Assembly: GCF_002113885.1 (NCBI RefSeq)
Contig: NW_018480074.1
Location: 1-64,000, forward strand
Length of the DNA: 64,000 nt
Direction: 5' to 3'
Origin: Mizuhopecten yessoensis
Taxonomy: Eukaryota
Below the pieces are notes generated by a model, which was not told where the DNA came from, did not search any database, and worked only from the letters and a program-made list of their open reading frames with translations. The translations under genes were made by a program, and so were the position numbers. Positions within the stretch are counted from its first letter, which is position 1, and every line of letters starts with the position of its first letter. Below are positions 4,978 through 57,082 of this stretch, piece by piece.

Positions 4978-5325
4978 TAGTGGAACTGGACTGGTTGGAT
5001 CATTGGCGACCAGATAACTCAATTGGTCGAGCGTCCGTCAACAGTTCGGAGGGTCCCAGGTTCCTCTGGCCATGCATTTCCCATCTGCTATTACATTTGG
5101 TGCCAGTGACCAACCCTTGTTTCAAGTACTAGGGATACCTGAACCTGGGTTGTAAATACATGTAGTTGTGTCTATGGGGGCAAAGACTTAGGAAAATGAG
5201 GGAGGAATGTAGCAGAACTGGACTGCGTAGATGATGTCAGCGACCAGTTATAGGTTACATCTAGAGTTCGAAGGGTCCCAGGTTCGAACCCTGGTCTGAC
5301 CGTGCATTTTTCATCTCCTATTACA
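4978..5325 (+). mobile_element. Miniature non-autonomous LTR retrotransposon (TRIM) with tRNA-like sequence in both LTRs (Ajax-like)
   Basis: LTR1 ~4978-5095 ends ctattaca; PBS-like tggtgccagtgacc follows; ~110 bp internal region; PPT ggaaaatgagggaggaa; LTR2 5208-5325 (TGTAG...TTACA). LTRs carry A-box-like taactcaattgg and B-box ggttcgaacc. Confidence 0.7.
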
Positions 5326-5326
5326 C

Positions 5327-5788
5327 AGGTTGGGCACAACAGTGCATATGGGTAATAATCCTGCATTTGGGTAACATCTTTGTATGTTATGGGTGAATGC
5401 ACTTCGAATCTACTTTCACTATCCTATATAAAAAGTCAAAATTTTGTACTTCACTATCTTTATTAAAAATCGCTATTTATATGGTTATTATAAACAACTT
5501 TTGGTTAAACGTTTTTTTGTGTTTGGACATTTTCGTGATTTTAGAAGTCTCAACTTTTCTAAGGCTTCAAAGGTCGTGAAATACTTTCAAAACCAAAAAC
5601 TGTTCAACCAAAAGTTGTTTGTAATAACCGATAGATATGGCGATTTTCAAAGACGTAAGTTAAGTACAAAATTTTGATGTTTTATATAGGATATAGTGAA
5701 AGTAGATTTGAAGTGCATTCAACCATAACATACAAAGATGTTACCCAAATGCGGGATTATTGCCCATATGCGCTGTTGTGCCCAACCT
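5327..5788. mobile_element. Foldback/MITE with ~190 bp inverted arms
   Basis: aggttgggcacaacag.gcatatggg...aacttttggtt is mirrored by aaccaaaagttg...cccatatgcgctgttgtgcccaacct. The paired ORFs 5172-5402(-) and 5674-5859(+) are by-products. Confidence 0.85.
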
Positions 5789-6229
5789 TTTACACACACG
5801 ATAAATTAGAAAATGAATATAACAATGTCCATCATTTACAAAATATACGTGTATCTTAAGGTGGTCAAAAGTTATATATTTTTTTACTGGTTTACCTTTC
5901 AACATAATGTTTGTTACTCCTTTAAGTATAATTAAGAGTTTAAATATGTATTATAAACTATTTATAAGTATAAGTATAGTTTTAATCCCTGCACAACCGG
6001 AGTGCGCTGTTGGCAGGCTATTCTGCTGGCAACATATCAAGTGAGAAGAGGACATTCCTATCGACGTTCAACAACAGCAACTGAAGGACGAATTGTTCCC
6101 TGACAGTGCCAACGGAGCCGAATCAAAAACCTGAAACTTGCCCAATAACACAATCAAAATACTCCAAATAGAAAATGCATACCTGACAACGCCCACTGCT
6201 CTACGTACCTGTCAAGACAAACCAATAAA

Positions 6230-16824: not shown

Positions 16825-17240
16825 AGTCAGTTTGGACATGTTATACTGTGTTACACAGGTGTCAGTTTAGACATTTAACATTGTATTATACAGTATTATT
16901 AAGTGTCAGTTTGACATGTTACACTGTGTTACACAGGTGTCAGTTTAGACATTTTACATTGTGTTATACAGTATTATTAAGTGTCTGTTTGACATGTTAC
17001 ACTGTGTTACACAGGTGTCAGTTTAGACATTTTACATTGTATTATACAGTATTACTAAGTGTCAGTTTGACATGTTATACTGTGTTACACAGGTGTCAGC
17101 TTAGACATTTTACATTGTATTATACAGTATTATTAAGTGTCAGTTTGACATGTTACACTGTGTTATACAGGTGTCAGTTTAGACGTTTTACATTGTATAA
17201 TACAGTATTATTAAGTGTCAGTTTGACATGTTATACTGTT
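16825..17240. repeat. ~78-bp higher-order tandem repeat related to the ~35-bp unit
   Basis: Repeated tttgacatgttacactgtgttacacaggtgtcagtttagacattttacattgtattatacagtattattaagtgtcag, ~5 copies. Confidence 0.85.
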
Positions 17241-18373
17241 TTGTAGAGATGTAAGTTTAAACATTGTACATACATGTTATACAGAGCTGTATATTTATAG
17301 AATACATTAATTGTCTTTACTCAAGTATCTTATCAGTTTGTTGCAGTACCTCCAGCATCCATTGCCAGGTTTTATACCTAGATAGCTTGATTAAACTGGG
17401 TTTATTTCTTAATTTATTAATTGACAATAAGTCATAGTCTACAAAGTTTATAACCAACTTTTTATGTAGTTGTGTGATAATATCTGATAAGTATCAACTG
17501 CATTTGTTTAAATGTCTTATTAGTATGTAAAACATTAAAATATATTTGAATATGTTTATGTTTGCGTTTCTTATATCGGAGACTTTTCTGTCCGAGTGGT
17601 AGGCAATGGGTTCTGTCCCTACGGCGAGAATGCCAAAGTCCTTAACATGCTAATAGCTGTTCCCTGCTTAATGTCCAGCATTAGATCCGTGCTGTCGCGT
17701 ATTTATAACGACGTATTTATATTTATATAAGGAGGCGCCAACATACCCGGACTCTAGCAAACATACATGCATACATTACACATACGAAGGCATGTCCTTA
17801 AATGACCTTAGTTGTTAATAGCACCTAAATCCTTTACAACCAATCTGCCCATTGTTCATCCCGTTTATACAATGCAGTATGGTTTATGCACAAAGTGTGA
17901 AATTCTTCGAAAAAAAACTGTGAGTCACGATGATTTGGTACTTTTATTATGTATAGTTTTGTTGCATGTACCAATCATACAGAATGAATCGAAATGGTCA
18001 ATGGTCTTTGATGAGCTTACAAATTCAGTCGCATTGAACGGTCGTTATTACTATGATCAATCCAGATGGACCCTTTGGATTTCTGTTGAAAGGTTCCTTC
18101 TGTACAAGTTCCCATTAACAAAGTTATAATCAGTAGTATATGCTGGAATAGTTGTGTTCCTCCATCCGTCATCTACATTGCTAAAACTTAACATTACTTT
18201 TAGCTTGTGTGGTCACGAGGATCCTACATGTAGTTGATCTTGATTTGTGGTATAACAAAAGAAGCTAAAGGTACCTTACACCTAGATCGTTCCCTGTTTG
18301 GTATACTTCCACCACGGATATCTAATAGACTTCACAGGCTGACCACCAACGAGATGAAGATTACTCCTATGGA

Positions 18374-23274: not shown

Positions 23275-24282
23275 ATGGATTTGGAAACGCAAGCTCGTGA
23301 ACGTCGTCTCAGTGACGTAGCGCGCGGGAAACAGTATCTTCGTCAAATCGACAGTCTAGCGGAGAAGCACTGGAACAAACTCGAACCTAGGAACATAAGC
23401 ACAAGGCAAGTGTCAGTGGGTCCTCTTAAAGAATATACATTCATTCTAAACGGATCATACCAGCAGGGAGATGACAGTGTTTCAAACAGGGTAAAGTCAA
23501 AACGTAGGATTCATTCCGAACAAATCCCGAAAATAAACGGGAAATTGTTAACAGATCGTGTGCAATCTGAGAGACTGGGCGGACACTATGGCGTGAATTC
23601 TCTGAGAGGAACGCATTTGTTTAACCAATGGGGATCGAACATCGATCCTTTGGCTGAAAAGGTGACTCTTAAAAAAGGTGATATACAACAAACATTTTCG
23701 TTTGGCGATGCAAACCGGAAAGTTCAGAAACCAAGTCCCAAAAAGGGAGTCTTAATGAGCCGAGTAAGCTCGGACTTCAAGGACCGACAAATAAAAACAA
23801 ACACCGACTTCCGGTCATCGCGGAATGGGATGGTGGCAGTCATACATCCGGTTGGTCCGTCACCGGACGCGGAAATCGCGCCAGACGTCATCGACCAACA
23901 GATGATAGAACGCGAACAGACATCAGTGATGCTGAGCAGGATAGACCGGATGTTACACCCGAACAGATATGCGTTGAAAACAAAGCTGGCCCCAAGTGAA
24001 CAGGAAGTGTCTCACAATTCCTTCCAAGCGTCGTCAGACACTTGTAAAAGTCTAAAAAAGAACATCCAGCAGGCCCATTCTAACGGTGGACAGAAACTTG
24101 TTCCTCGGACAAAAGAAGATCGTCCCAAACTGTTATCTAACCCCGCCTACGCGCCAAAGACCTCTGGCAATCCAGTTAAAACGTTTGCGCAGATGCTGAA
24201 CGAATTGGACAGTACACAAATTAACGTGGACCGGAAGTGTCGTTTATGGATCAATAAATTGACGTTCGATTCCTACGAGTGA
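23275..24282 (+). CDS. Uncharacterised 335-aa basic, largely disordered protein; single coding exon
   Basis: 1-kb ORF richer in GC than its flanks; upstream spliceable exons (donor after 21692, exon 21889-21933, acceptor 23049). No domain recognised. Confidence 0.75.
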   Translation: MDLETQARERRLSDVARGKQYLRQIDSLAEKHWNKLEPRNISTRQVSVGPLKEYTFILNGSYQQGDDSVSNRVKSKRRIHSEQIPKINGKLLTDRVQSERLGGHYGVNSLRGTHLFNQWGSNIDPLAEKVTLKKGDIQQTFSFGDANRKVQKPSPKKGVLMSRVSSDFKDRQIKTNTDFRSSRNGMVAVIHPVGPSPDAEIAPDVIDQQMIEREQTSVMLSRIDRMLHPNRYALKTKLAPSEQEVSHNSFQASSDTCKSLKKNIQQAHSNGGQKLVPRTKEDRPKLLSNPAYAPKTSGNPVKTFAQMLNELDSTQINVDRKCRLWINKLTFDSYE

Positions 24283-29900: not shown

Positions 29901-31430
29901 TATTAGTAAACAACTTGATAAATAGCAAGCAAATGTGAAGGGAGAAATTAACACCTTGCAAATACTGATTTCAACAGCTTATGGCGAAAGTTTGATTGGG
30001 CGAAAGTTTCACTGGACATAAGTTTGACTGGGCGAAAGTTTCACTGGACATAAGTTTGACTGGGCGAAAGTTTCACTGGACATAAGTTTGACTGGGCGAA
30101 AGTTTCACTGGACATAAGTTTGACTGGGCGAAAGTTTCACTGGACATAAGTTTGACTGGGCGAAAGTTTCACTGGACATAAGTTTGACTGGGCGAAAGTT
30201 TCACTGGACATAAGTTTGACTGGGCGAAAGTTTCACTGGACATAAGTTTGACTGGGCGAAAGTTTCACAGGTTAGCATTTGCATGTTAAAATATAGGTCT
30301 GCATAGTCACATTTACTGATTAGTTATTCGGATTATGCACAAAGACGACCATCTGCAGATAAGGGTGAATTAATCAAGTACACTGTACATGTATACATAT
30401 GATATTACACATACAAACTGGTATGTTTTAAACTCACATTTGTTTGTTTCAGATGAAGTGCAGGTCAGAAAATGCGACTCTAGCCCAAGTGGATGATACT
30501 TACGAATTAGAATTCCTCAGAGCATTGGTCAAGCGATTTCCAACAGGTATAATGATGCATAGTATACTTTATGGGCGATATGGATGGACCACATTATTCA
30601 ATACATTTAAATCCATGCAGCTTGTTATAATGTATCGTTTATCGCAGGCAACTCGCATACAAAGTGTATCTTGTAAATGGTTTACTCCCAAACAACTAAA
30701 TACAAAAAGGTATGAAGTATAGTCGCCACATCAAAGATTTATTATAAAGTCAATATGATGTATATGTCTGCAAAATGAACTTATAAGTTACATCCACGGA
30801 GAATATTTTATAAATTCCTTGCAATTACTTACAGATCCAACAAGCAAACATTTCTACTGGATTGACGGTGTGCGAGGTAATAGTAACCATTGGTTACGAA
30901 ATAGTGACCATGCCTCTCTTGCCTTTTTCGCCTGGGGTTCCGGGGAGCCTAACAACAGATTTGGAGGGAACGTTTGCTTGGCGTTATATAACCATGTAGA
31001 CTTTTACTTCGCGGACACTTCCTGTTACGAAAACGGCCAGTTCATCTGTGAGTTGAGGTAGGTAAGTCTAAGGTTGTGTTTGTACAGTCATAAAATGATA
31101 AACAGGTCTACGATTTGATACGCGTGTTCAGTTAACTGAAATCGATGCACTAGATATTGTGCTACATCCATGTAACAATAAAAAAAATGCTGGTTGGCCT
31201 TGGATATTTGCGACATTAGCTGATATTTTGAGAAACATGCCCCGTTGGATTTGATCTTTCGTTAGCAATTTTCGGGGCAATTGATCTCACAAATTGAAAC
31301 CTCAAAATTATATCAAGGTAATCTGATGTAAATGCGTTGATTGTTTTCCAGTGATCCTGTCAATCCATGCATACAGACAACACCGCCTCCTACTAACTCC
31401 ACAACTGGGGCGTGGGTACAATTAGGCTAA
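26943..31430 (+). pseudogene. Secreted perlucin-like C-type lectin (EPN) with in-frame TGA in exon 2; pseudogene or null allele
   Basis: Exons 26943-26991, 28877-28965, 30453-30546, 30835-31057 and 31352-31430 give MVSLKSLVISLGIAQIALAVCPDGWI*RGQSCYFIS...MKCRSENATLAQVDD...YWIDG...WGSGEPNN...CLAL...FADTSC...FICELSDPVNPC...QLG*. TGA at 28906-28908. Confidence 0.85.
29983..30268. repeat. 32-bp minisatellite (dimer of related 16-mers), ~9 copies, in lectin intron 2
   Basis: aagtttgactgggcga + aagtttcactggacat repeated. Confidence 0.95.
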
Positions 31431-34052: not shown

Positions 34053-36760
34053 CGGGTCTTACGTTCATGGTGATGTTTCAAGGATCTTCATGTAAATCCT
34101 GACTTCGTTCATAGTTCGCTCTAGTTTTACTGGTTAACCGACATTAGCTTAAAGTGACTAAGAGTTGTAATTTATACAACATTGATGGTTTTCTTTTCTT
34201 GATCTGTTAAATCTTCGTAACAGCTAAAGCCATATGAAAACGGAAGCCCAAATCATACCACCGAAAAGTCAGAGTAGGTAGGAGAAAAAAGGAAGACTAG
34301 AGATCTTCTTGCAATACTATGCAAAGTATTGCAATGGGGATAGGGGGGATTTTGTTTCTGTCGATGTCCCCTTAGAGACGCAGAATAATTTCTACTCGTT
34401 GGTTTGTTTCTCACTCTTGTGGCTTTTCTGACTGACTAGGTTATCCAGGGCACGTTGATTCAAATTCATGTTTGATGTCTTCAAAGTTCCAACATTTCCG
34501 GTTAGATTGTCCTTAATTTTTTTGTACATGGTGTTTGGAGTTTTCTTTTCAAGATATACACTTATAACACATTATTCTGTGACTATGATTTAAGTTAACC
34601 TTCATATAATGTTAAAAATAACACAATGTTATAATTCAGAACTATTGCAGGAGATGGCTGAGTGGAATTTTACCAGAAACTTTTCTTGTGTCTTGGCATG
34701 GTTTCCATATTTTGCACTTTTATCGATTTATTTCACCGTACTTATTAATAAGCCTTCCAACCAAAGTTCGTGTGCTGACCGACGTCTTCAGAAGAAATGG
34801 CAAACGGATGATAACCTATATATTTGGATTGTGTCCTTGACATCGAAGTGTTGAGATACGGTGTGAACAATATCACAGAACTTCGTCTCGGTAAACTGAA
34901 AGATAAGGAAATACATGATAATTACCAAGTTTGTGCAACATCTATGGCGGTATAGCGATAATTGAATGCACATTGTCTTACGGTTTTACATGTGTGTACT
35001 TTCAAGAAATCTCTCAAATATAGACAGAGGACTAAGACCAGGTTACACTATCACGATCCTTGAATAACAAGCGTCTACAACGCTCAAAACCTTAAAATGT
35101 CCTGTCAAATATAAGCAGCCATATGGGTGTTGTATCAATGCATCGTGAACATTATTGTTTTACAATGAATTAACTGTTTTAATAATTGTCCATATTTTGG
35201 CACAGGTAGTTTTATAGTATGTACAAAAGCGTATTGGAAAACGTGACCTTATCTCACTTTAGCATATTAAAAGCAAATTTATCGAAATAATATAATATAC
35301 AAAAGATACATATTGGCGTATCATAAACTACCACAAACTAAATGAGAGATAGGTGAGTTGGTTCAGTCTGGCGTCTGATAGTCAGAAAAAAACACACCAT
35401 TAGATAGTTCGAAAGTAAATTTCTGAAAGCCCTATATAGTCCGAATATTTAGTTAACCGAAAACGTGATCTCACTTCAGCATATAAAAGGCAAATTTATC
35501 GAAACTAGCACGATTAAAGAAACGTCTTCACTGTAGCCATAAACACGAATGAGAAAAGTACTATGAGAATTTACATCTGGGCGCAATTCGTCACGAGCAC
35601 GTCAAAATTGAGAGCGGCACCAATGGTGCTTTTCCTAAATTTCATATAAGGTCAAATAAGCGTATGACATAAGTCTAAAGGGAGGAAGTATCCTAGATAA
35701 GACATCGGGAGTATGTTCTGAACCGAAATCATTCAGGAACTTGAAGAAAACGTCATGCTGACCCTGACTTATAGAAGTCCCAGTGCACAGTGCTCCTGAC
35801 AGAAAAAGTTTCCAGTGGGTTTTTCAACAGGCCACCTTAGAGCGACTGACAGGGAGGCAGTCTGAATAAAAAAGGCATTCTCTGTACAGATTTCATCTGT
35901 CTTCCTCTGTGTTCGATGCTAAAGTGTCTTCTTTCACCTTCTATTTTATTGACTGTCAGTTCCATTAGCTGTGTTTCTATGGTTTGAGAATGCTATCTGC
36001 TTCCAGGTTAAGTTGCTATGTTTAGCATTTACATATTGTCAGCATAAATAGCAAGCGCCTGTGGTGAGGAATTCAAAGCGTTCACGTGCAATTATTTGAA
36101 TAATAACTGCTTTTGGTTAGGCCGAATAATTGAATGAAACATCAAACCATTAAATCTGGCTTTTTCATAATAAGGTTGTTCGTGTGTTATTCCCTTAAAC
36201 CACAGAGTATCTTAACATAATTATGTGCTATTGGAAACTATTCAAGCCTTTATGAAGTCCAACAAACGATTCCTTACTGAATACTTTATTTAGACCCCAC
36301 ATTTCGGAAGCTCCACCTACCACTTCAAGTTCTCGCAGGGCTCAACGATGATAACGATATTTCATGTACAGTGTCTTCGTGTTGAGATATGATATTATAC
36401 AAGACCAAACATTTATAACATCGTTTCCATTTCGGCGACTCGTGTTGCTGTGAAGCATGTTTTGTGGCTTGGTTTAGACCGCTGTAAGACATTTAGGTTA
36501 TTCTCTATGAAATAGTTTTTAGAATTTGGTAGCATGTGCAAGAAAATCTCTTGATAAATGATGTTAAAAAATAGCTCTTGCCAAACTATGAAACTACTGT
36601 ATTCGGTCACACCTTATATAACGATAATTTGAATACTAACCGGCGTGCGCCAGGTATCATCCACGTGTACGTAGATATTCACGTACATCTTTCGTAATGA
36701 ACAAACACAAATTGTCAATAGTTTTTGAGTCTGTATTCACCAAGTTGTGATAATTAATAA

Positions 36761-37561
36761 CTAAAAACAATTTGACGTCTTCGGAGAACAAAACTTGTTG
36801 ACTGGTAGACCGAGGGATGTCAATTGACCTTTGACCTCCGTCAGAATTTCGCTACTCAGCTGCGGTATCCGAGAGAAGACGACAGCCCCTTCGTAGTACC
36901 AGTCGGTTGCCACATGGCCGCAGTAGTAGCCAATCATATAGCTCAATTTAGGGTCCTGGTACAGGATTCTCCAGTCAGTAGTGGTCTCGTGTCCCATCTG
37001 CATGCTTTTGTACTCCAGTAGTCCTTGAAACGATGCGTTGTTTTGCACGGCAGTCTCGTTAACTAATTTGTGCTTCAGCTTGCCGTCAATTGTGTGAACT
37101 TCAAAACGCTCGTTCACAGATATAGTGTTGGAAGTGTTCGAAAGGCTAAAGGTTGTAACTTGGCAGTCAAAACAGTCAAAATTAGGGTTCAGTCCCATAA
37201 CGATGTACCATGAACCTTTCAGTTGTTGTCGGGACAAAGTTTTTAAAGGCAGATGTGGGGGAGTGCATCGGAAGTCGGGATCTGGCGAAACCATAGTAAT
37301 GCATTTATATTCCGTAAAAGCACACTTCATGAAGGTGTCGAACACGTCATCCTCGTACGAGTACAAACAGTCAAACATACATGTCTGGTTTTTCGTTCCA
37401 CAGCCCGTGATGCACGCGAGCGCCGACCGACAGTCTGGATCTAACATGCAGTTTTTAGACTCATCCGCGCAATGCACCATCATGCAGATTATGTTTTGAC
37501 CATTTCCGCCTTTTGGACAAAACAGGAAAAATAGTGATATGAATAGAAATACAGATAACAT
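36761..37561 (-). CDS. Violaxanthin de-epoxidase-like protein (VDE/VDL family: Cys-rich domain + lipocalin), 266 aa, intronless CDS, signal peptide
   Basis: Ten Cys spaced Cx4Cx6Cx5Cx5Cx3Cx6Cx3Cx14Cx6C, as in the VDE N-domain. LKGSWYIVMGLNPNFDCFDCQ (VDE G.W.I..GLNPTFDAFDCQ), DWRIL (DDWYIL), YYCG...W..YEGAVVFSR (YYRG...W.GYGGAVVYTR) and a terminal Cys. TATA-like element at ~37685; AATAAA at 36290-36285. Confidence 0.9.
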   Translation of the reverse strand: MLSVFLFISLFFLFCPKGGNGQNIICMMVHCADESKNCMLDPDCRSALACITGCGTKNQTCMFDCLYSYEDDVFDTFMKCAFTEYKCITMVSPDPDFRCTPPHLPLKTLSRQQLKGSWYIVMGLNPNFDCFDCQVTTFSLSNTSNTISVNERFEVHTIDGKLKHKLVNETAVQNNASFQGLLEYKSMQMGHETTTDWRILYQDPKLSYMIGYYCGHVATDWYYEGAVVFSRIPQLSSEILTEVKGQLTSLGLPVNKFCSPKTSNCF

Positions 37562-39290: not shown

Positions 39291-40982
39291 TGTTTCGACC
39301 AACTACACATTTTGGTTGTGATATCCTTGAAACCCCAGTGTTCAGCTCTCGATGCGCTAATATGTCATGACAAAATCGAAAGGTCTTTACGCGAGTCTTT
39401 GTGGATGATAAAAGGGGACTACTCTGGAATCTTTGATAAAGACCGGCAGCGTAACGGTAAAATTACCAGGCCTCATAGTTGAAGTAGTAATGTTCAAAGG
39501 ACATGTATCAGCCTATACCTGAAACCTGGCAAATAACTTACAATGAACCTTCATCCGTTATAAAGGTCACAGGGGTCAAAAGTGTATACACATTTGACTC
39601 ATGTGACCTTTATAATGGGTGAATGTCATTAAATAACAAAACCTGGTACTCCTTCATCCCAAAATGCTACTGGCCAAATGAAGAAGCTATCCTTTAAAGA
39701 TTTTAAACACATTTTGTCCCTGTGACCTTGAAAGTGGATCCTGGTCATTCACTTGAACACAATTGATAGTTCTTTGTCTAAGTATGCTACTGGCCAAATA
39801 TCACCACCTCGACTGGCTACCAGCCCCTCAGTTTTTATGGAGAATTTCTCGGCTGCATTTTACTACTAGCTTATCTCCCCCTAGTTTAGAACTTAGAATC
39901 AGGCATCCAAGTGATCAACATTTTTTTAGTTAAACTTTTTTCTTAATAATTCAATATTCTAGAGACGGGGGCCAGTCTAATCACCACCCTATCTTCGAAA
40001 CTCCAGGTGTTACGCTCGCTTACGTTCTCTGGAATTTGTCGTGACAAAGCTGTTTGATTGATTTCAGGTAAAAAAAAATCAATCGCTAGACTGATACCGG
40101 TCTTTTAAATAGTACAGAAGAGCGACACTAAAGCCATTCAATTTTACCGGTACACCACCGCACAATTATTGTGATGTACATCAAAGGATTAAACTCGTCT
40201 ACTTGTATCATCCGTAATGAGCTGCGTACAGAGTCTTCGAATTCACTGTATTCCAGGAATGCAAGAAGTGTGTGGAGATATATTACAAAAACATAATGAT
40301 AAATTATAGGCATACATGTTGTAAGTAACACTCTTATAGTTAATATTTACACAAGTGTATTCCTGCAATGACATGCATGCTGTTTCTTTACTTCATTTAC
40401 TCAAATATTTGCAATCATCCATATATCAATATGTGTCGTTTGCAAAGACAGAGATAAAGAAAGAAGAACAAACTGCAAAGAAAACAGATTGAAGAAAGAT
40501 AGAGAACATGAGTATTTTCTGAGATATAGTATGCAATTTACAAGCAAAGGATCACTCAATTGTATCAGAAAAAAACCCCTATTTCTTCGTTTACTTTGAA
40601 ATCTTAACGTTTAAGCAGAGACGTTTATATTAATATATACGTCTCTGGTTTAAGTAATATCTGTTGATCTAAGTTAATTGCTGAACTGATATATATAATT
40701 CCACTGTTCCAATAACTATGTACTTTGAAATAGCAAGAATGTCACCTATTTTATACGGTTATTGTAAAAGGCGGAATTTCTTCGAAGTCGTTCCGTCATT
40801 TGGTTTTTATGTTACAATTATCAAGCACTCTTGTGACGATGTTATTCCAATTACAAGCGCCTGAGCGCATCGATTCCCACATGTGTGAAGAGCCCGTCGG
40901 GCTAATGTTTATAATTGTTGTTATTCTTTAATCTTTCAATTTTATGTTCAAACTCTAAATCATCAAAGCTGAAATAGGAAAT

Positions 40983-43900
40983 ATGGGCAAACGTAAATTC
41001 AAGAAAAGTGTGGAAGGATCTCTGGGTAATTTGAAAACAAGCAGACGACTTTCACTGTCTGCAGTAGCCTGAGTTCTCTCTTGCACCACACACCAGACAT
41101 TTACCAATCTATCTGTCAAAATGTCTATGTCTGGAGTCAGGGCCGGAGAAAGTCGGGCTATGTCTTAAGCTGTTCAGTATCAGTAGGCTGGTACCAGTCA
41201 CCTGTTCACTGACTCTTTATAGTTACAATGTATGGCTGATATTTTACTGTTCAAAGGATGCATATTGAACTGTACAGTTTGTTGGCAAAATGTAATCAAG
41301 TCACAGCCTAAATATAACTGGTGGATCACAGGGGTTCGCTACAAATGTCTGTAATACACATATGCTATACTGATATGGTTCACAGCACACAAACATTTTA
41401 TGTGTGCTGTGACCCATAACAGTATAGCATGTGTATTTCAGACATTTGTAACGAACCACTGTCGGTGGATGTTAAAAGTACTAGTACATGTAGTGTATCT
41501 CGGACCAGTGTCATAAGACAGGTCATACTTTTAATTAACATCAATGAATTGTCTGACACACAGGGAATTGAGAATTTGTTAGAGCTATAGTTGGACCTAA
41601 ACTAAGGTGTTCCGGGTAATTGTACAAGTTTTAGGTGTTTAGATCATCTTTCAGTAAAAATGCCATCCCAATCATGATATTATACAGGGGGAAAGCTCTT
41701 GATGTAAGAAAAACATTTCTAGTTGAATCCTGTGGTTTGATTGGCTAAAAGTGAAGCCATTCTTTTGTCTAAAATAACATGCCAATCAACCCCACATGTT
41801 TCGGCATGTGACTGACGTCAGTCTCATGAATATGGAAAAAGTTGGTCTAAGACTGCAAAAATTTTGAAGTTCGGAAATGGTGTGTGTTTTTGAAGGAAAA
41901 GGAGACCATGCCTGTGAAAGGAGAATAAATTTTACGTTCATATAGGAGGTTTTTAAAATACAAATTGTCCATCTTTCGTACTTTGTACTAAGCATTTCAA
42001 TGTATATCATTCAATGTCATCCAATAATGAATATATTAAAATTTAAGATGTAATGTCCAGTTCTACTCTTCTTCAGAAATTTATAAATTCCTATCAGTGT
42101 TAGTTTCCCTTAGACACACCATATTGTACTGTGTTTTGAATATGAAATTGAAAAATTATTTGATTAAATTGCCAGTTAAAACGAACAAGAAAAAATCTGA
42201 ATTCAGTAGCTTTGACAAATCATTGTGTATCTGGTGTATGTTTGTATTGTTAAATATGTTAGAGAAAAAAGTGTCTGACTGTACCAGGAAAGTTATTGAA
42301 TATGCTCTTGTTTTCATTCTAGTGGAAAGGAGGAGACGGATACAACAAGCAAAGAGGGAAGTGGCTCTTGAATCGAAAGGCAAATCCCCAAAATACAGTG
42401 TTGAGCAGCTTTTGGAGAAGGTAGATTGTTGCTATAGAATGACATTTATCACTGGCTACTGGTAACTCAAATTGAGTTATATGAGAAGTAAATGAACTTT
42501 TTACATCAGAGATTAACTCATGAAAATTTTAAAGTAGTTTACTAAACCTTTATGTAAGTTTTGATAGCTGCTATCTAGTGTGGATTGGATACTGTAATGC
42601 TTGTTTTAATGTTAGTCTATAAATTTCAGGAATAAAATGTGCCTCTGCTCTTTCTTGGTGCAACATACAATACAGAGATCAGAACTGGTTTAAATAAAGA
42701 ATGATGTGATTAATTCAGCAGGGTTTTGACACATTCAAAGGAATAATTTAGGACCTAAATATTTAGTTGCAAATATAATGTAACATGGCATGAAATGGTG
42801 AACAAATAGAGTAAAGGGAGACAATTTGCTCTTTACTGCTGAGAAACACTAGGGCCGTTTTCGTTTAAATGGTTCAACTGGTGGGACCACAGTTGTTGGT
42901 TTATTAAATAATGTCGGACATAGTAATCTGATGGCACTTTCAGGCGAGCCTTGACAAAGCCTTGCAAGGCCTGCATAAACATTTGCAGGTCAGCCAGGAT
43001 TAATACCGAAATTATTACATTTAAACAAACCAATTGTTCCGCATAAACGAACAGGTCCTTTTGCTATATGTCAGTGACGAAACAGACATTTGTTCATGAT
43101 TCTGTTAGAGGGGATTTAGGCTGAACATGTGAGGATCGAAAAAGTCTCTGACATAATATGTTTTCTCATCGCTAGATAACGTTGTGGCTATCACTGATAC
43201 GTTCTTTATATACATACATTATGTAGAGCGTAATGAGTCCATTTCTATGGGACATCAGATATTATCCAACAAGTTTTATCCAGAGTTAAAGGGAAGTTAC
43301 CATTGAAATTACTTCTTTGACCCATAACTCATGGCTATCGGATGATATACCTTAAATTTTCATCTGTCCATACTGATTATCATTGGTTGAATAGTAATCA
43401 AGTCCATTTTTTTATACAGTCGTGTTTATGATATACATGATCATGTGTACATCCAGTTGAAATATTCACAAGCTAATGATAATAAGTCATTAGTGCTATG
43501 TTTTCCATACACAGGCAGAAGATTGTATAGACAGATTTGAATATGAACTTGCCCAGAAATTCTGTCAGAGGGCTTTGGAGATGGAGCCTGATAGCATTCT
43601 GGCTCTGGAAACAACTGGATCCCTTCTCTTAGAGCTTGGAAATCAGGAGGCAGCCAAACAGGTATGGATACTGACAGATGTGGAACTGAATATTTGTGTG
43701 ACAAGCTTCTGGTTTCTCCACAATTCCACAGTAGATTTTAATCAGTTTGTCACTTGCAGATTACTTTTTCTGTATTTCAGTACATGTTTGGTCTAATTAA
43801 AGTCAGACCATTATTGACAACATAATTTGCAATGCTCTTAATATGTAGAGCATTATATTAATTTGGATTACATGTATTCTTAATATGTAATTAAAGTTAC

Positions 43901-46900
43901 TTAGGATACTCTTTAGTTTTGATACATGGAGTATTGTAGTAAAGTAGGATACTCTGAATATGTAGAGTATAATAGTGAATGAGGATATTTGTAATACATA
44001 GAGTATTTCAGTAAATTGAAATAAAGGTATTCTAAATATAGAGAGTATTATACAGTGCCGTCAACTCTGTGTAAACCAGACTGTTTTGTCTAAGCAAGCC
44101 AAACTACTCTGTCCTGGCTCTAAATTCTTCTTTAACTATGATACTTCAGTAATATTGTCCAAGTGGCATTCAGTTTAGACCGAGTCCACTGTAGAAATAA
44201 GGATATGACCTTATTGGATTGACATGTACATAATTTTTTATGCATTCCCTTTATGTAGAAAAAACAGAGAAACAATACTTCCTTTTGTTTGAATTTCAGT
44301 ACGAGGTACATATTCTGCCTTTTGCTGCTTGCAATACCAGGTTATTTCCCTTGATGTGTTATTCTATCTAGATCTGTTGGTTTTGAAGAATTCCAGCTTA
44401 TTAATAATGGTAATTTTTGTTCTTAAGCTTTATTTTTGTTTCATTCCACTACCCTTGCAGTGTTTTGGCCGAGCTGTGGAGGTCTGTCCAAACCAAGGCC
44501 ACTCCAAGTACATGTACCTGGGGCAGTTGTTTGAAGGTGCTCAGGCTGTTCAATGCTTTCAGAAGGGGATAGAATTGATGATGAAGGAACATGAAGCAAA
44601 GCAAGCATCAGAGGTATGCAGTGGAAAAGATATCTTCTCATATTCATTAGTTTTTGTATTCATTTAAAGTTGGAATTATTCAGTAGATAAGATTTAGAAC
44701 GCTATAAATAAAATAGAAAATTGTATTTGGAGAATAAAGACCTCTTGTGATTTCCTGCAAACAAGATATTAACGCAAAAACATCTGTATTTTAAAAGAAA
44801 GCCATTTCTCATATATCAGTGATGTCCAATCTTTGTTGAAATTTATTTTACTAAAGTGTAATTGGATGTTAATAGTTGGCAGCCGCCTGCGGGGGTGGAC
44901 CACGAGAGGGGGTCTCCTGTGAGGAGATCTGCAATGCTTACCTGTCCCTGGCTGAACTCTACATGACAGACTGTTGGTAAGTGTTCACATATTGTCACAG
45001 GGGAGCAAAATTCACATCAGCCCAGTCAGAACTATACTGGACCTGTATTCATGAAACAGTTCTCATGCTCAGGCGCGGATTCTGCGCACAAACCAACTTT
45101 CTTGTAATACACTTACATCATGTGACACGATCAAAAGGTCAGGTGTAAATACTCAAAATGGTGTCTGGCCGTAAGTCTTGGTAAAGTTCTTGCAAAATTG
45201 ACAGGTGATTTTTTTATTAATTTATCATAGTAACATTAAATGGGGCTTGAGCACAAAATCTGAGTTTGAGCGTGAGAACGGTTTGATGACTGGTCCCTGG
45301 TGTTGTGATGGTAAACTTTTAAATGTGGGTGCCGATGGAAGACACCGCATCAGGTGGTCTAGTATTGCCATGAAAAAATAAAAAAAATATGACAACACCA
45401 TTATTTATTATTGAAAGAAAGTTTAGTTCCCTGCTTAGCTCGCCGTCATCTCCAAAGACTTGCTCTTTTTATCATTGAAACTTTTGATTGTTTCTTAACT
45501 TTTCATATTTAAAATTGTAGTATGGAGGAGGATGCAGACAAGAAATGTGAACATAACATAAATCAAGCACTGGCGATAGACGGTGATAATGCTGAGGCCT
45601 ATCAGATGATGGCCAGCTATCACCTCTCTAAAGAAAATGAGGAAGTAGGTATTCTTAATATCCACCACAGTATGTTTAGTTCTCTTGAGAGAGTGACGTG
45701 GGTTTTTCGTTTCATTACATACTCCCTTATCATTGTGCAGTTGCTAATTTGCGATGAGCAGGAGAGGGAGTATACTTCATATATTGAACTGTAAATAGAA
45801 TGTGAAGATTTCATTTTCTCTTATGTTTCTATAGAAATCAACATTCATATTATCCAAGTCTGTTATTTTTGTTAACATTTATCAGAGATTTCATCTCTTA
45901 GAATTGGTATTTATGGAGGAAGTAAACAAAACCTTACTGGTTTTTAGGTCACCTGAGCTTTGCTCAAGTGACTTCTTTTGATCACTTTCCGTCCGGCGTC
46001 GTCCGTTGTCCATAAACTTTTTACATTTTCGATTTCTTCTCAAGAATCAGAGCATGGAATTTTTTCAAACTTGGTCAGAATAATCCTTGTTAGATGAGGC
46101 TACAATATTGTAAAATTGGGATTCCTACCCCACGTCCTGGGGACCAAAAGGGAAAATTAACCAATATTTCAAAAATCTTCTTCTTAAGACTCGGAGGTAC
46201 TACAGTCATTTTCTCTGCATGAATGGAAAGATCATGTAAATTTCAGGACCCCCAGGCCATCCCTTCTCCCTTGGGGAGGGAGTCAAGTTTACTATAGGGA
46301 ATGGCTTTATTGAAATTGTCAATTTCAGGACCCCCCATCCATCCGTTCTCCCTTGGGGAGGGGGTTTAGTTTGCTATAGTTTATATAGGGAAATTTTTGG
46401 GTATATTTTATCCATTTTCAGCAGAAAATGATTCAAACTTGGTCAGAATGGTCTTTGGTGGATGAGGGTATCACATTGTAAAATTGGGATTCCTGCCCCA
46501 TCCCCAGGGGCTAGGGCGGGGCCCCAAAGGGAAAATTTACCAATATTTTAAAATTCTTATCCTTTGATGACATTACAATTATTGAATTTAACATAGTTTA
46601 CATGCTGATTTCCACATCACATCTCGACAATGAAATTGAGCTGCCAGTACCTGTGATATAACTCAGGTGACCGCTTGGGCCTCTTGTTATATAATCTTTT
46701 AAAAAACTTATCATTGCTGAAGTCTGAATATTGCAATGTTTTAGATGGCTACGGAGATGATAAAGAAAAGTGTATCGTTATGGTTACCAAAGTACAAAGC
46801 AGCTGATAAAGGGGAAGTGCCAGACGAGGAGTTTAACCCACTAGAGGTAATCATTGATACTGTATATTACTTCACTTTGGATGTAAGAAGAAACTTTGTT

Positions 46901-49900
46901 TTGAATTAACACAATTGTTATACAACATCGCTGTTGTAGCAAATCCTGGGGGAATATTAAGAGAACATGTTGGTATTGCAAAGTTTGTTGTTGAATTGAT
47001 TGTACACAGGCAAATTCAGTTGTTCTCAATAATATTAATTGTGAAAAAAAGAAATCACCTTGAAAAGTAATTTGGAAATTGTATTTAGGATTTTTTATAA
47101 ATATTTTGTCATTCAATTGAAGGGAGATAACTGTGAATATCCAACTCGGTTATGATGTATTTATTACAACACATTATTTATCAGGGTGGAAACAATAGAA
47201 CAGGTTGTTAGCTGAACTCACACATTTTCACAGCTTATTGGCATCTGTTGTAATATTAAACAAGGGTCAAACTTTGGGCTTTCAAAACATTGTGAAGTTT
47301 GTGATTTTGCAGGTTTTTGTGAGGGGTTAAATTGATCCCGAGGTGGGAGATGTACCAAATTGGGGTTTTGGCTAATTTTGATGGATTTTCCGTCACTATC
47401 CAGCACAATCAGGTGATTGACACCTACCTATACATTAATTATGTTTTCTATGTGGTGCCTTGGGACTTTTAGGACAACCGTTTCTTTTCCAGTTGACACC
47501 ACTAAGTTATGATACCAGGATAGCAGCAGCCAAAATTTTAACTGAAGTAAAAGAATACGAGGTTGGTAATATGTATTTCCTTCTTCATTCTCATAGGAAC
47601 ATGTTCATGCACACTTAAATGATACTGAAAAGTCCCAATTTAGATCGTATATTCATGTTCTGAAAGGTAATTCTTTATTCATTTATCAAAAATTCATTTG
47701 TTTTTATTACAAAATTGTCATCTTAAAGTAAGTACTACTCTTGCATGACTCAATCGAATTCCCCATCCACCTCCAAAAATGGTTTCTACATGAAATATAC
47801 CTAGTACTTATTTCTATTTAATTAAATGACATTTGTTTATGTTTAAATGAAAAGTTTTTAACTCGGCAAGACTAATATAGATGATCTTGGTTAAAAACAA
47901 CAGAGCTTCGTACCGATGCTAAGATTACTTTTTTAAGCTGAATTCAGATGTAAAGATTAGTTTTGGTTTGCTTCTAGAAGATGTTAAGATTAACTTTTAC
48001 AAACTTAGTTATCAAGACATTCAGATTAATTTGAGGATATTTGAATCGAGCAGTTTCCTGTCAAAATAGACAATGATTTGTTCACACTGAATCTATCACC
48101 TAGACTGCTGTGGATGTGCTGGAAGGTTTACTGGACGAGAATGATGAGGTTCCACAGGTCTGGTATATGATCGGCTGGGCCAACTACTTACAGGGCCCTG
48201 ACTACAAAGAGAATGCCCGATACTACCTACAGCAAGCCAAACAGGTAGGTTCTGTCAAATCTTCATTAGTCACTGTGAACTTAACTACAGCAGGAAAAAC
48301 AGGTAGGTGTTGACAAATCTTCATTAGTCACTGTGAACTTAACTACAGCAGGAAAAACAGGTAGGTCTTGACAAATCGTCATTAGCCACTGTGAACTACA
48401 GCAGGACAAACAGCTAGGTTTTGACCAATCAACATTGGTCACTGTGAACTACAGCAGGACAAACAGGTAGGTTTTGAAAATCAACATTAGTCACTGTGAA
48501 CTTAAATACAGTAGGAAAAACAGGTATGTTTTGACAAATCGACATTAGTCACTGTGAACTACAGCATGACAAACAGGTAGGTTTTGAAAATCAACATTAG
48601 TCACTGTGAACTTAAATACAGCAGAAAAAACAGGTAGGTTTTGACAAATCGACATTAGTCACTGAACTACAGCAGGACAAACAGGTAGGTTTTGAAAATC
48701 AACATTAGTCACTGTGAACTTAAATACAGCAGGAAAAACAGGTATGTTTTGACAAATCGACATTAGTCACTGAACTACAGCAGGACAAACAGGTAGGTTT
48801 TGACAAATCGACATTAGTCACTGTGAACATTACTATGCAGTAACAATCAGTTCAGCTGCAAAATGAGATTTTCTGATATTTAACATGTTGTTCAATAACG
48901 CTTGGTGTATAATTAATATACAATCCTCCGATTCCAGTTGATGATTCTGATGTATAAAGAAGTAACAGCACAAATCTAGAAAAAAAGAAAAGTTTATTTT
49001 GTAACTGAAGGTTGCATTATGCATCTGTGAAGTACATTACCTTTGTGTAATCTCGCATGGCTACGTCTTTTACAGGTGTATGACAAGATTAAATGTGATG
49101 ATCCGGATCTTTTGAAACACGTGGAAGAACTAACAGAGGAGATTGGCCCAGGTATGTAGTCTACTATCTAGTTCTGAAAGTTAAATAGATATATTAAGTC
49201 CAATTTATGAAGATTCAATTTAAATGAAGATATTAACTTGACTACGAAATTTCAGAGCGCTTGAAATTTAGATACAAATATGTTGTAACTGATTTTGGAA
49301 AATAAACCTTTGGTCTATTAAAGTCTAGTTTTCCTGAAGTTACTGGATATGTCCAGTCTTTCCCAAAATGATCTTTTCTGACCCCCTTCATTCATGTTGT
49401 GGGCTAGTGACACAGTATTGAAAATCCTTGATTGCATAATTTATTAAAATTTCATGTTTTTCTCAACCTCTGGCATAAAACCAGAATTAGGGGATAACCC
49501 TACTGTATTTTGAAATTTGCTGCGGTATATCATGATTATACTGTCGCAAATTGAGTTTTACTGGCGACGAGGAGCGGAGCCAGTAAAACTGATTGACGTC
49601 TTTGAAAAGTTCCTTGTGGTAGAAGTGTTACCTTGTTACCAATGCCTTTCATAGCTGCAGAAATGTTGCCTTGTTTTATACACAAGTCAGACCTCTATGG
49701 TTGTTGTAGAAAAGTTGTGTGTCAACTTTCAAAACTAGTAAGTGTAGTATGTGTTTTCAATGACTAGTTCAGTATGTACCCTGTCAACTTCGTAAGACAA
49801 ATTACAAATCTAATTTTATGTACCCAAAAGTGCAAAATATATACCAGTTGGCAATATATAATCAAAGTCAGTCTGCATATGCCGTAAGCATATGACCACT

Positions 49901-53707: not shown

Positions 53708-54056
53708 CATCCTGCATACTCCATCCTCGATAACCAAGGGTTACGCTCACTTTCGCTCTCTGCACCCCTGGAATATGTCATAGCAAAATCGAAGGCTCNC
53801 ATACTCTAGGGGTTACGTTTATGTCATAGCAAGATTGAAGACAGCTGTTTGATTGGTCTCGGGTAAAAACCCTGACCATTCGCTGGGATGATATCTGTCC
53901 TTTGAAGATTACAAAGGGGTTACACACGACTTCAAAGCCAGTCAATTTTACCGCGACGCGACGAACATATTCTTTTGATGTATATCAAAGGATCAGACTA
54001 GCCTTCCCTTCCTGTAGTGAGCGACAGTGAGCGTAACCCCTAAAGTATCGAGTATG
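53708..54056. mobile_element. Longer copy of the Mutator-like family seen at 18374; contains an N
   Basis: catcctcgata.cca.gggttacgctcactttcgctc ... gtgagcgtaacccct..agtatcgagtatg; flanks aatgtcactt / aatgtgactt. Confidence 0.65.
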
Positions 54057-56191: not shown

Positions 56192-57082
56192 ATGGCATCA
56201 AAACAGAAGTATTCTGTGACCCGGCTCCAAAAACTGCCTCCCATACGTGAGGAATCATTCGCTGGCGCATCTCCCCGGACTCCCCGAGTTCCCTATTCAA
56301 CCGCCTCAGTACCGGTCAAGGCAGGCTCTTCTATCCCGCCTTCTAATGAACCGAGGGCTAATCTGGCAGCTCTAAACACAACCTCACTAAGTAAGCCAAG
56401 AATACACGTCAGGCCGCTCCCGGGCGCCGATTCTGACGATGAAGTTGATAGACCACAGTTGATACAGAAGCCACGTCTGACCGTGGAGATGCCGATGACC
56501 CCGAACGATAGCCACACTCTGGTTGATGGACTAGTGGCAGACTACCTCCATTACGCGGCCTATGGCCACATTATCCCTGTGTACGAGGGCATCGGTCAGT
56601 TACAGTGTTCTTGTTGTAATGAAAGGAACAGAGAGAACGTCCGAAACCTTCTTGGCCTACCGTCCTCGGACAAAAAGGTGATAAAGCACAAGAGGGCACA
56701 GTTAGGTCGGCTTCAGCCTAAGTTTGTACCACCGACCAAACCTAAGGAGAATCACGAGGCTGACGAGAAGGCATGGAACGCGCCAAAGAAGAAACACAAC
56801 GAGAAGATCGATTGGAAGAACGAAAGCTGGATGAAACACCAACCGCTACCAGCGGCAACAAACTTTTTGAATCCCGAGTTCAATCGTCCTATATATGCCT
56901 ACCAAAAACCGCCCGAAATTGAGATACCTTCATTAGTGTTTGACTCTGTGCTTCATGCAAACACGAAGTACGACCAGTCTATGAAAAGATTGGAAAAAAT
57001 GTTTCGTATTGACCCGGAAATTCCCCCTAATCCGGACGAGGACTACCTATATAACGGTGCTCCAGAGTGGAGCGGCATTTAG
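56192..57082 (+). CDS. Uncharacterised 296-aa Pro/Lys-rich protein; single coding exon
   Basis: 891-nt ORF richer in GC than its flanks; acceptor tttcag at 56141; probable upstream 5'UTR exon ending ~55851; ordered-looking core DYLHYAAYGHIIPVYEGIGQLQCSCC. Confidence 0.8.
   Translation: MASKQKYSVTRLQKLPPIREESFAGASPRTPRVPYSTASVPVKAGSSIPPSNEPRANLAALNTTSLSKPRIHVRPLPGADSDDEVDRPQLIQKPRLTVEMPMTPNDSHTLVDGLVADYLHYAAYGHIIPVYEGIGQLQCSCCNERNRENVRNLLGLPSSDKKVIKHKRAQLGRLQPKFVPPTKPKENHEADEKAWNAPKKKHNEKIDWKNESWMKHQPLPAATNFLNPEFNRPIYAYQKPPEIEIPSLVFDSVLHANTKYDQSMKRLEKMFRIDPEIPPNPDEDYLYNGAPEWSGI

What the first reader, a model, noticed from the sequence alone, without database searches (positions are those of the whole stretch)
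36761..37561. Violaxanthin de-epoxidase-family gene in an animal genome: candidate carotenoid-modifying enzyme
Seen: an intact 266-aa ORF with the diagnostic VDE 10-Cys domain (spacing matches plant VDE as I recall it, apart from one shorter loop) fused to the VDE-type lipocalin (GLNPNFDCFDCQ; YYCG; GAVVFSR), embedded among spliced metazoan genes and animal-type repeats. Knowledge: VDE drives the xanthophyll cycle in plants and algae, algal VDL paralogs act in neoxanthin/fucoxanthin synthesis, and bivalves convert dietary epoxy-carotenoids by largely unidentified enzymes. Inference: an animal enzyme or carrier for algal epoxy-xanthophylls, acquired horizontally or retained patchily. Homologs may already carry automatic annotations, but I know of no functional description in animals.
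Basis: partly seen in the sequence, partly recalled or inferred. Interest (0 to 1): 0.93.

Follow-up and report, generated by a model that had tools for sequence, protein, structure and literature searches.

The report
Secreted plant-enzyme relative in scallops
Scallops, and many other algae-eating marine animals, carry a real gene for a secreted relative of the plant light-protection enzyme violaxanthin de-epoxidase; it probably handles dietary algal pigments, and no paper I found describes its function.

Summary
The 266-aa ORF is real. It matches Pfam VDE (E 5.9e-48), its 10-Cys spacing matches plant VDE except one loop, and its predicted lipocalin is closest to the VDE crystal structure. 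It is a scallop gene, not contamination: it is syntenic in Pecten and Ylistrum, under purifying selection (dN/dS about 0.07), and present in RNA-like assemblies. Homologues occur in oysters, ark shell, abalone, chiton, Lingula, amphioxus, an acorn worm, sponges (about 70 clusters), a chytrid, an algivorous amoeba and a few bacteria. These form short, secreted, disulfide-rich lineages outside VDE (AU-rejected) and not nested in VDL. Old inheritance with patchy loss therefore fits better than recent transfer from algae. It is not a true de-epoxidase: it lacks catalytic D177 (Thr here), H121, R138, the transit peptide and the acidic tail. Most animal relatives keep a VDL-like Glu at that site; scallops and oysters instead carry Glu151 and Glu169, inferred to face the cavity. 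Best reading: a secreted or lysosomal protein that binds, and probably acid-rearranges, dietary epoxy/allenic xanthophylls. A 2008 paper saw an oyster EST and dismissed it as contamination. The scan noted this same stretch once before, not on other DNA.

The parts
36761..37561 (-). Intronless coding sequence of a 266-aa VDE-family protein
   Evidence: 83-85% identical orthologues in Ylistrum and Pecten; dN 0.077, dS 1.04 vs Pecten
37499..37561 (-). Putative signal peptide, residues 1 to about 21 (no plastid transit peptide)
   Evidence: Kyte-Doolittle 11-mer up to 3.0; similar hydrophobic N-termini across homologues; no dedicated predictor was run
37301..37486 (-). VDE-type helical 10-cysteine domain, residues 26-87
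   Evidence: Cys spacing; four helices in the model
36767..37273 (-). VDE-type lipocalin barrel, residues 97-265, with Cys 99, 130, 133, 214, 258, 265; no Glu-rich C-terminal domain
36977..36979 (-). Thr195 at the position of catalytic D177 of Arabidopsis VDE (Glu in VDL)
   Evidence: alignment with 3CQN and family alignment; role of D177 from PMC13181403
36923..36973 (-). Conserved Trp197 (W179) and Tyr213 (Y198 of VDE)
37055..37111 (-). Glu151 (position 135 of VDE) and Glu169 (Q153 of VDE; Glu in all 7 VDL rows): candidate replacement acids
   Evidence: facing the cavity is inferred from strand alternation and VDE equivalence, not measured
36562..36760 (-). Probable 3' UTR, at least this far
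   Evidence: a contig of run X1 spans 36562-36733
40944..49173 (+). Neighbour, not part of the gene: exons of a divergently oriented TPR-protein gene; synteny anchor
30828..31063 (+). Neighbour: C-type-lectin-like exon; synteny anchor on the other side
   Evidence: named from motifs only

Best explanation
This is a true scallop gene of an old, undescribed, short and secreted branch of the VDE family that many algae-eating invertebrates kept. SHOWN: domain layout, selection, synteny, taxonomic spread, and a tree position outside VDE and not inside VDL. INFERRED: the protein enters the secretory or endolysosomal route (signal peptide, 4 N-glycosylation sequons, extra disulfides). It takes the ring end of a dietary 5,6-epoxy or allenic xanthophyll into its barrel (Trp197, Phe138, Tyr213 kept). 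It then rearranges or opens the ring by acid catalysis without ascorbate, as VDL does, and does not reductively de-epoxidise. Most animal members use a Glu at the D177 site. Scallops, oysters and ark shell lost it and probably use Glu151 and/or Glu169. Likely outputs are the known orphan conversions in bivalves: epoxide opening or rearrangement and allene-to-acetylene conversion.
For: Family identity. In 68 sponge-clade proteins the D177 site is Glu in 61, and W179, Y198 and D114 are kept in 67, 67 and 68; such conserved buried polar residues suggest an enzyme. VDL has Glu there, works without ascorbate and peaks at pH 5-6. Glu169 matches all VDL rows. Named carriers are suspension feeders, grazers, an algivorous amoeba and a chytrid parasite of an alga (feeding habits from my own knowledge). 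Bivalves open epoxy rings and convert allenes to acetylenes (PMC3093257). Expression is patchy: high in run X1, near nil in X22-X24, absent in X20 and X21.
Against: There is no biochemical or tissue data; the runs are coded, so the expressing tissue is unknown. The scallop protein lacks the acid that VDE needs. The orientation of Glu151 and Glu169 was not read from coordinates. Bacterial and other heterotroph homologues may act on non-carotenoid ligands. Absence from non-algivores was not tested.
Confidence: 0.45

Rival explanations
1. Non-catalytic carrier: the scallop and oyster branch is a secreted lipocalin that binds and transports or stores xanthophylls, like crustacyanin, and has lost catalysis.
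For: D177 is replaced by Thr or Ser in scallops, oysters and ark shell. The Cys99/Cys214 pair aligns with Cys of the ApoD-like sandercyanin. Most lipocalins are passive carriers.
Against: Two Glu are conserved at inferred cavity positions in exactly these bivalves, and D114, Q119, W179 and Y198 are kept. The Cys domain needed for VDE activity is intact.
Confidence: 0.27
2. Enzyme or carrier for a non-carotenoid hydrophobic ligand, such as a lipid or sterol epoxide, an oxylipin or a chlorophyll breakdown product, reflecting an ancestral function older than plastid VDE.
For: Homologues occur in a chytrid, an amoeba and bacterial MAGs, and the family diverges deeply (25-40% identity).
Against: All characterised members (VDE, VDL1, VDL2) act on epoxy-xanthophylls; the named carriers mostly eat algae.
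Confidence: 0.2
3. True ascorbate-dependent de-epoxidase making zeaxanthin or diatoxanthin from dietary epoxides.
For: The ascorbate-side residues D114, Q119 and Y198 are conserved. Scallops are rich in diatoxanthin derivatives.
Against: D177, whose mutation abolishes activity, is Thr. H121, R138 and the acidic tail are absent. A VDE clade is rejected.
Confidence: 0.07
4. On origin only: horizontal transfer from an alga or bacterium into early animals (once or twice), rather than vertical descent from an opisthokont or earlier ancestor. A recent transfer into bivalves is unlikely.
For: The coding sequence is intronless in molluscs, Lingula and the acorn worm. No intron position is shared between amphioxus and the chytrid. 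Sponge and bilaterian groups are not resolved as sisters. A sister position to VDL is not rejected.
Against: The gene is present in sponges, protostomes and deuterostomes. Bilaterian rows plus the chytrid form one group (94/99). Nesting in VDL or joining VDE is rejected. GC3 resembles neighbouring ORFs.
Confidence: 0.3
5. Algal contamination or chimeric assembly.
For: Suggested in 2008 for an oyster EST (PMC2483416).
Against: The gene order is the same in two other scallop genomes, on 3.6 Mb and 52.7 Mb sequences. Orthologues lie on multi-megabase scaffolds of oysters, abalone, chiton, amphioxus and acorn worm. The stretch is held by 19 runs of the same organism from 7 studies.
Confidence: 0.01

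Closest known systems
Violaxanthin de-epoxidase (VDE/NPQ1; Arabidopsis, PDB 3CQN/3CQR)
   Same: 10-Cys domain plus VDE-type lipocalin; D114, D117, C118, Q119, F123, W179 and Y198 equivalents kept
   Different: No transit peptide and no Glu-rich tail; D177 is Thr, H121 Thr, R138 Glu, Q153 Glu; extra Cys; signal peptide and glycosylation sequons; separate clade
VDE-like proteins VDL1 (violaxanthin-neoxanthin tautomerase) and VDL2 (diadinoxanthin to allenoxanthin) of chromalveolate algae
   Same: Same fold; no H121; Glu at the Q153 site; most animal relatives share Glu at the D177 site
   Different: VDLs are plastid proteins with long N- and C-terminal extensions and their own motif set; the bivalve rows are not nested in VDL; scallop has Thr at the D177 site
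VDR (VDE-related) of plants and algae
   Same: Cys domain plus lipocalin; function unresolved
   Different: Distinct, long-branched clade (100/100); plastid-localised
ApoD/crustacyanin/sandercyanin-type secreted pigment-binding lipocalins
   Same: Secreted barrel; matching Cys positions before strand A and in strand G; Z 17-19
   Different: They lack the 10-Cys domain and the VDE signature; about 15-22% identity

Membership tests
VDE family (Pfam PF07137) | Profile score above the curated cut-off | tested here: met
   163.9 bits vs 25.7
VDE family (Pfam PF07137) | 10-Cys N-terminal domain followed by an 8-stranded lipocalin closest to VDE | tested here: met
VDE proper (EC 1.23.5.1) | Catalytic D177 | tested here: not met
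   Thr195
VDE proper (EC 1.23.5.1) | Catalytic Y198, with W179, D114, Q119 | tested here: met
   Y213, W197, D129, Q134
VDE proper (EC 1.23.5.1) | pH switch H121 with Y214, and R138 | tested here: not met
   T136, F229, E154
VDE proper (EC 1.23.5.1) | Plastid/thylakoid targeting peptide and Glu-rich C-terminal domain | tested here: not met
   25 residues before the first domain Cys; protein ends at the barrel
VDE proper (EC 1.23.5.1) | Member of the VDE clade | tested here: not met
   p-AU 4.8e-44; reference rows labelled by motif and architecture, not by database name
VDE proper (EC 1.23.5.1) | Ascorbate-dependent de-epoxidation | not testable with these tools
   needs an assay
VDL | Glu at the D177 site | tested here: not met
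   Thr in scallop; met in abalone, chiton, amphioxus, acorn worm and most sponge rows
VDL | Nested in the VDL clade | tested here: not met
   p-AU 7.7e-5
VDL | Sister group to VDL | tested here: inconclusive
   not in the best tree; p-AU 0.12
VDL | Epoxide-to-allene tautomerase activity | not testable with these tools
   needs an assay
VDR | Member of the VDR clade | tested here: not met
   VDR rows are a separate 100/100 clade

The most novel reading that the evidence does not exclude
The secreted VDE-family branch is the missing enzyme family by which bivalves, sponges and other algae-eaters open, rearrange or dehydrate algal epoxy and allenic carotenoids (fucoxanthin to halocynthiaxanthin or mytiloxanthin, diadinoxanthin to its ring-opened products). 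It may also represent the pre-plastid state from which plant VDE was recruited, with the catalytic acid relocated in scallops and oysters.
Probability: 0.3. Interest if true: 0.9.

Novelty: new variant of a known kind. Interest (0 to 1): 0.72.

Why it matters
A 2026 review treats VDE, VDL and VDR as genes of photosynthetic eukaryotes (PMC13181403), and the one animal sequence seen earlier was written off as contamination (PMC2483416). Real, conserved animal members, expanded in sponges, overturn that view and change where the xanthophyll-cycle enzyme may have come from. They also give a concrete, expressible candidate for the enzymes behind bivalve and sponge carotenoid metabolites, which I found assigned in no paper. 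That bears on shellfish colour in aquaculture and on carotenoid biocatalysis. Automatic annotations already name some of these proteins, so their existence is not hidden; the function and the evolutionary reading are what is new.

Tried and rejected
Contamination was rejected by synteny. Recent transfer from algal VDE or from within VDL was rejected by AU tests. Shared intron positions as proof of vertical descent: none found; amphioxus has 3 introns, the chytrid 1 elsewhere, the rest none, so this is uninformative. A 5' UTR intron: not shown; the X1 contig starts at 37552 and no joint was seen. A profile search of the word-indexed database with alignment A1 returned only 7 proteins and added little. 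Literature searches for a function in animals found only the 2008 EST remark and a one-line mention in the Manila clam genome paper. No second copy lies in the window. I did not fetch other copies of this genome, and left the single N at 53799 untouched. Rows left out of the trees: partial or frameshifted proteins (including P0048) and the 68 added sponge-clade rows, which were only scored at key columns.

Full report
Observation. The minus-strand ORF 36761-37561 encodes 266 aa with no stop. Pfam VDE matches residues 25-259 at E 5.9e-48. The best solved relative by sequence is the Arabidopsis VDE lipocalin (3CQN, E 4.7e-13). The AlphaFold model (pLDDT 90.1) has four short helices and then an eight-stranded barrel with a C-terminal helix. 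Foldseek and VIA both rank 3CQN first, although other lipocalins follow closely (Z 20.3 vs 19.1). The ten-Cys spacing equals that of plant-type VDE rows except one loop of 6 instead of 8 residues.

It is a scallop gene. The nearest proteins are from Ylistrum balloti (83%) and Pecten maximus (85%). In both genomes the gene lies head to head with a spliced TPR gene, and window exons at about 41-49 kb and at 30.4-31.1 kb match collinearly on both sides. The downstream exon reads as a C-type lectin domain. dN/dS against Pecten is about 0.07. GC3 (0.54) resembles two other long ORFs of the window (0.49, 0.53). Nineteen runs from seven studies of the same coded organism hold the sequence. In run X1, contigs cover the ORF and about 200 bases beyond the stop at depth 91, with none over the 1.8 kb upstream and only about 4 over the first conserved TPR-side block, as a transcriptome would (RNA status is the tool's guess). 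Three confirmed RNA runs of 2026 give next to nothing, and two runs of another study lack it. Expression thus looks restricted, but the tissue is not known.

Spread of the family. Named homologues: Crassostrea virginica, gigas and angulata, Ostrea edulis (three loci); Tegillarca, Haliotis, the chiton Liolophura, the chytrid Quaeritorhiza haematococci; Glandiceps, Branchiostoma, Lingula, an extra Nannochloropsis paralogue, the amoeba Leptophrys; the sponges Halichondria and Dysidea among 70 related clusters; and three bacterial MAGs. An Atlas cluster of 174 members is mostly Mollusca where the phylum is known. Most of these share a short architecture: hydrophobic N-terminus, Cys domain, barrel, end. 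They have extra Cys at query positions 99, 130, 214 and 258. Cys99 and Cys214 align with Cys of the ApoD-like sandercyanin; in ApoD such a pair forms a disulfide (own knowledge), which hints that the secreted form is the older state.

Tree. A 62-row ML tree (258 columns) gives VDE (99/93), VDL (100/100), VDR (100/100), a bacterial group (100/98), a sponge-containing group (100/97), and a group of all bilaterian rows plus the chytrid (94/99). VDE, VDL and VDR rows were labelled by motif and architecture, not by database names, and the tree is unrooted. Joining the bivalve-type rows with VDE is rejected (p-AU 4.8e-44), and so is nesting them inside VDL (7.7e-5). A sister position to VDL is not rejected (0.12). 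The chytrid and Lingula are long branches. The simplest reading is presence in early animals with many losses. An ancient transfer cannot be excluded: most animal copies are intronless and no intron site is shared.

Active site. By the review PMC13181403, VDE needs D177 (proton donor) and Y198. W179, F123, F155 and Q153 bind the carotenoid; D114 and Q119 bind ascorbate; H121, Y214 and R138 form the pH switch. The scallop protein keeps D114, D117, Q119, F123, W179 and Y198 equivalents. It has Thr for D177, Thr for H121, Glu for R138 and Phe for Y214. VDL has Glu at the D177 site, needs no ascorbate and peaks at pH 5-6. Abalone, chiton, amphioxus, acorn worm and 61 of 68 sponge-clade rows also have Glu there, which argues that the animal family is enzymatic in a VDL-like way. 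Scallops, oysters and ark shell have Thr or Ser there, but all carry Glu151 (position 135 of VDE, next to H121) and Glu169 (Q153 of VDE; Glu in all VDL rows). Both lie on the face of their strands occupied by hydrophobic residues, so I infer they point into the cavity and may replace the lost acid. These sequences are kin, so this is a single event and not a statistical covariation.

Mechanism. I favour a secreted or lysosomal protein of the digestive system that binds dietary epoxy or allenic xanthophylls and rearranges them by general acid catalysis (0.45). Rivals are a pure carrier (0.27), a non-carotenoid ligand (0.2) and a true de-epoxidase (0.07). Bivalves are known to open epoxy rings and to convert allenes to acetylenes in fucoxanthin and peridinin (PMC3093257), so such chemistry needs enzymes. 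Localisation, substrate and catalysis are all inferred.

What is known. Coesel et al. 2008 (PMC2483416) found one C. virginica EST, could not place it, and suspected algal contamination. The Manila clam genome paper lists VDE among oxidoreductase families in one sentence (PMC5499747). The 2026 review discusses only photosynthetic members. NCBI labels some orthologues 'violaxanthin de-epoxidase, chloroplastic-like'. I found no functional study, within a library that misses most subscription papers.

Verdict. A real animal gene, a member of the VDE family but not of VDE, VDL or VDR proper: a new variant of a known kind. Interest 0.72.

Noticed in passing
P0059, P0225-P0292; L009:10001-10910: Large expansion of the family in sponges (about 70 clusters at 90%; Halichondria and Dysidea named), with a nearly invariant Glu/Trp/Tyr/Asp set; the best group for finding the catalytic function. 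The L009 copy is split by a frameshift, perhaps a long-read error.
   Followed up: partly
L006:3290-4729; L007:3905-4753; L008: Bacterial VDE-family genes, although a 2008 paper said none exist in prokaryotes. One is a lipoprotein-like fusion in a Spirochaetales MAG; another lies between a LysR-like regulator and a membrane transporter (named from motifs). They keep Asp at the D177 site and group with Leptophrys.
   Followed up: partly
L014:5001-6120 (P0056): The homologue in Quaeritorhiza haematococci, a chytrid parasite of the astaxanthin alga Haematococcus (host from own knowledge), falls with the bilaterian group on a long branch and also has Glu151 and Glu169.
   Followed up: partly
P0085: Nannochloropsis oceanica has an extra paralogue of the short Cys-rich type, outside VDE, VDL and VDR.
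   Followed up: no
L012:38-823 and 5001-5900; L003:2639-10795; Ostrea edulis LOC130046680-82: Tandem duplicates of the gene in Lingula and in an unnamed animal contig (three copies); three consecutive locus numbers in O. edulis suggest the same.
   Followed up: no
window 37480-37561; P0008: A database model identical to this protein starts at Met28 and so drops the signal peptide; the orthologues support the upstream ATG.
   Followed up: yes
window 39350-40200 and 41100-41460: Interspersed repeats that attract many partial RNA reads from elsewhere in the genome.
   Followed up: no
window 16848-17246: ORF made of a tandem repeat with a unit of about 22 codons; likely a satellite.
   Followed up: no
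window 23275-24282 (+) and 56192-57082 (+): Long single ORFs (335 and 296 aa) with no Pfam hit.
   Followed up: partly
window 53799: A single N; left as is.
   Followed up: no
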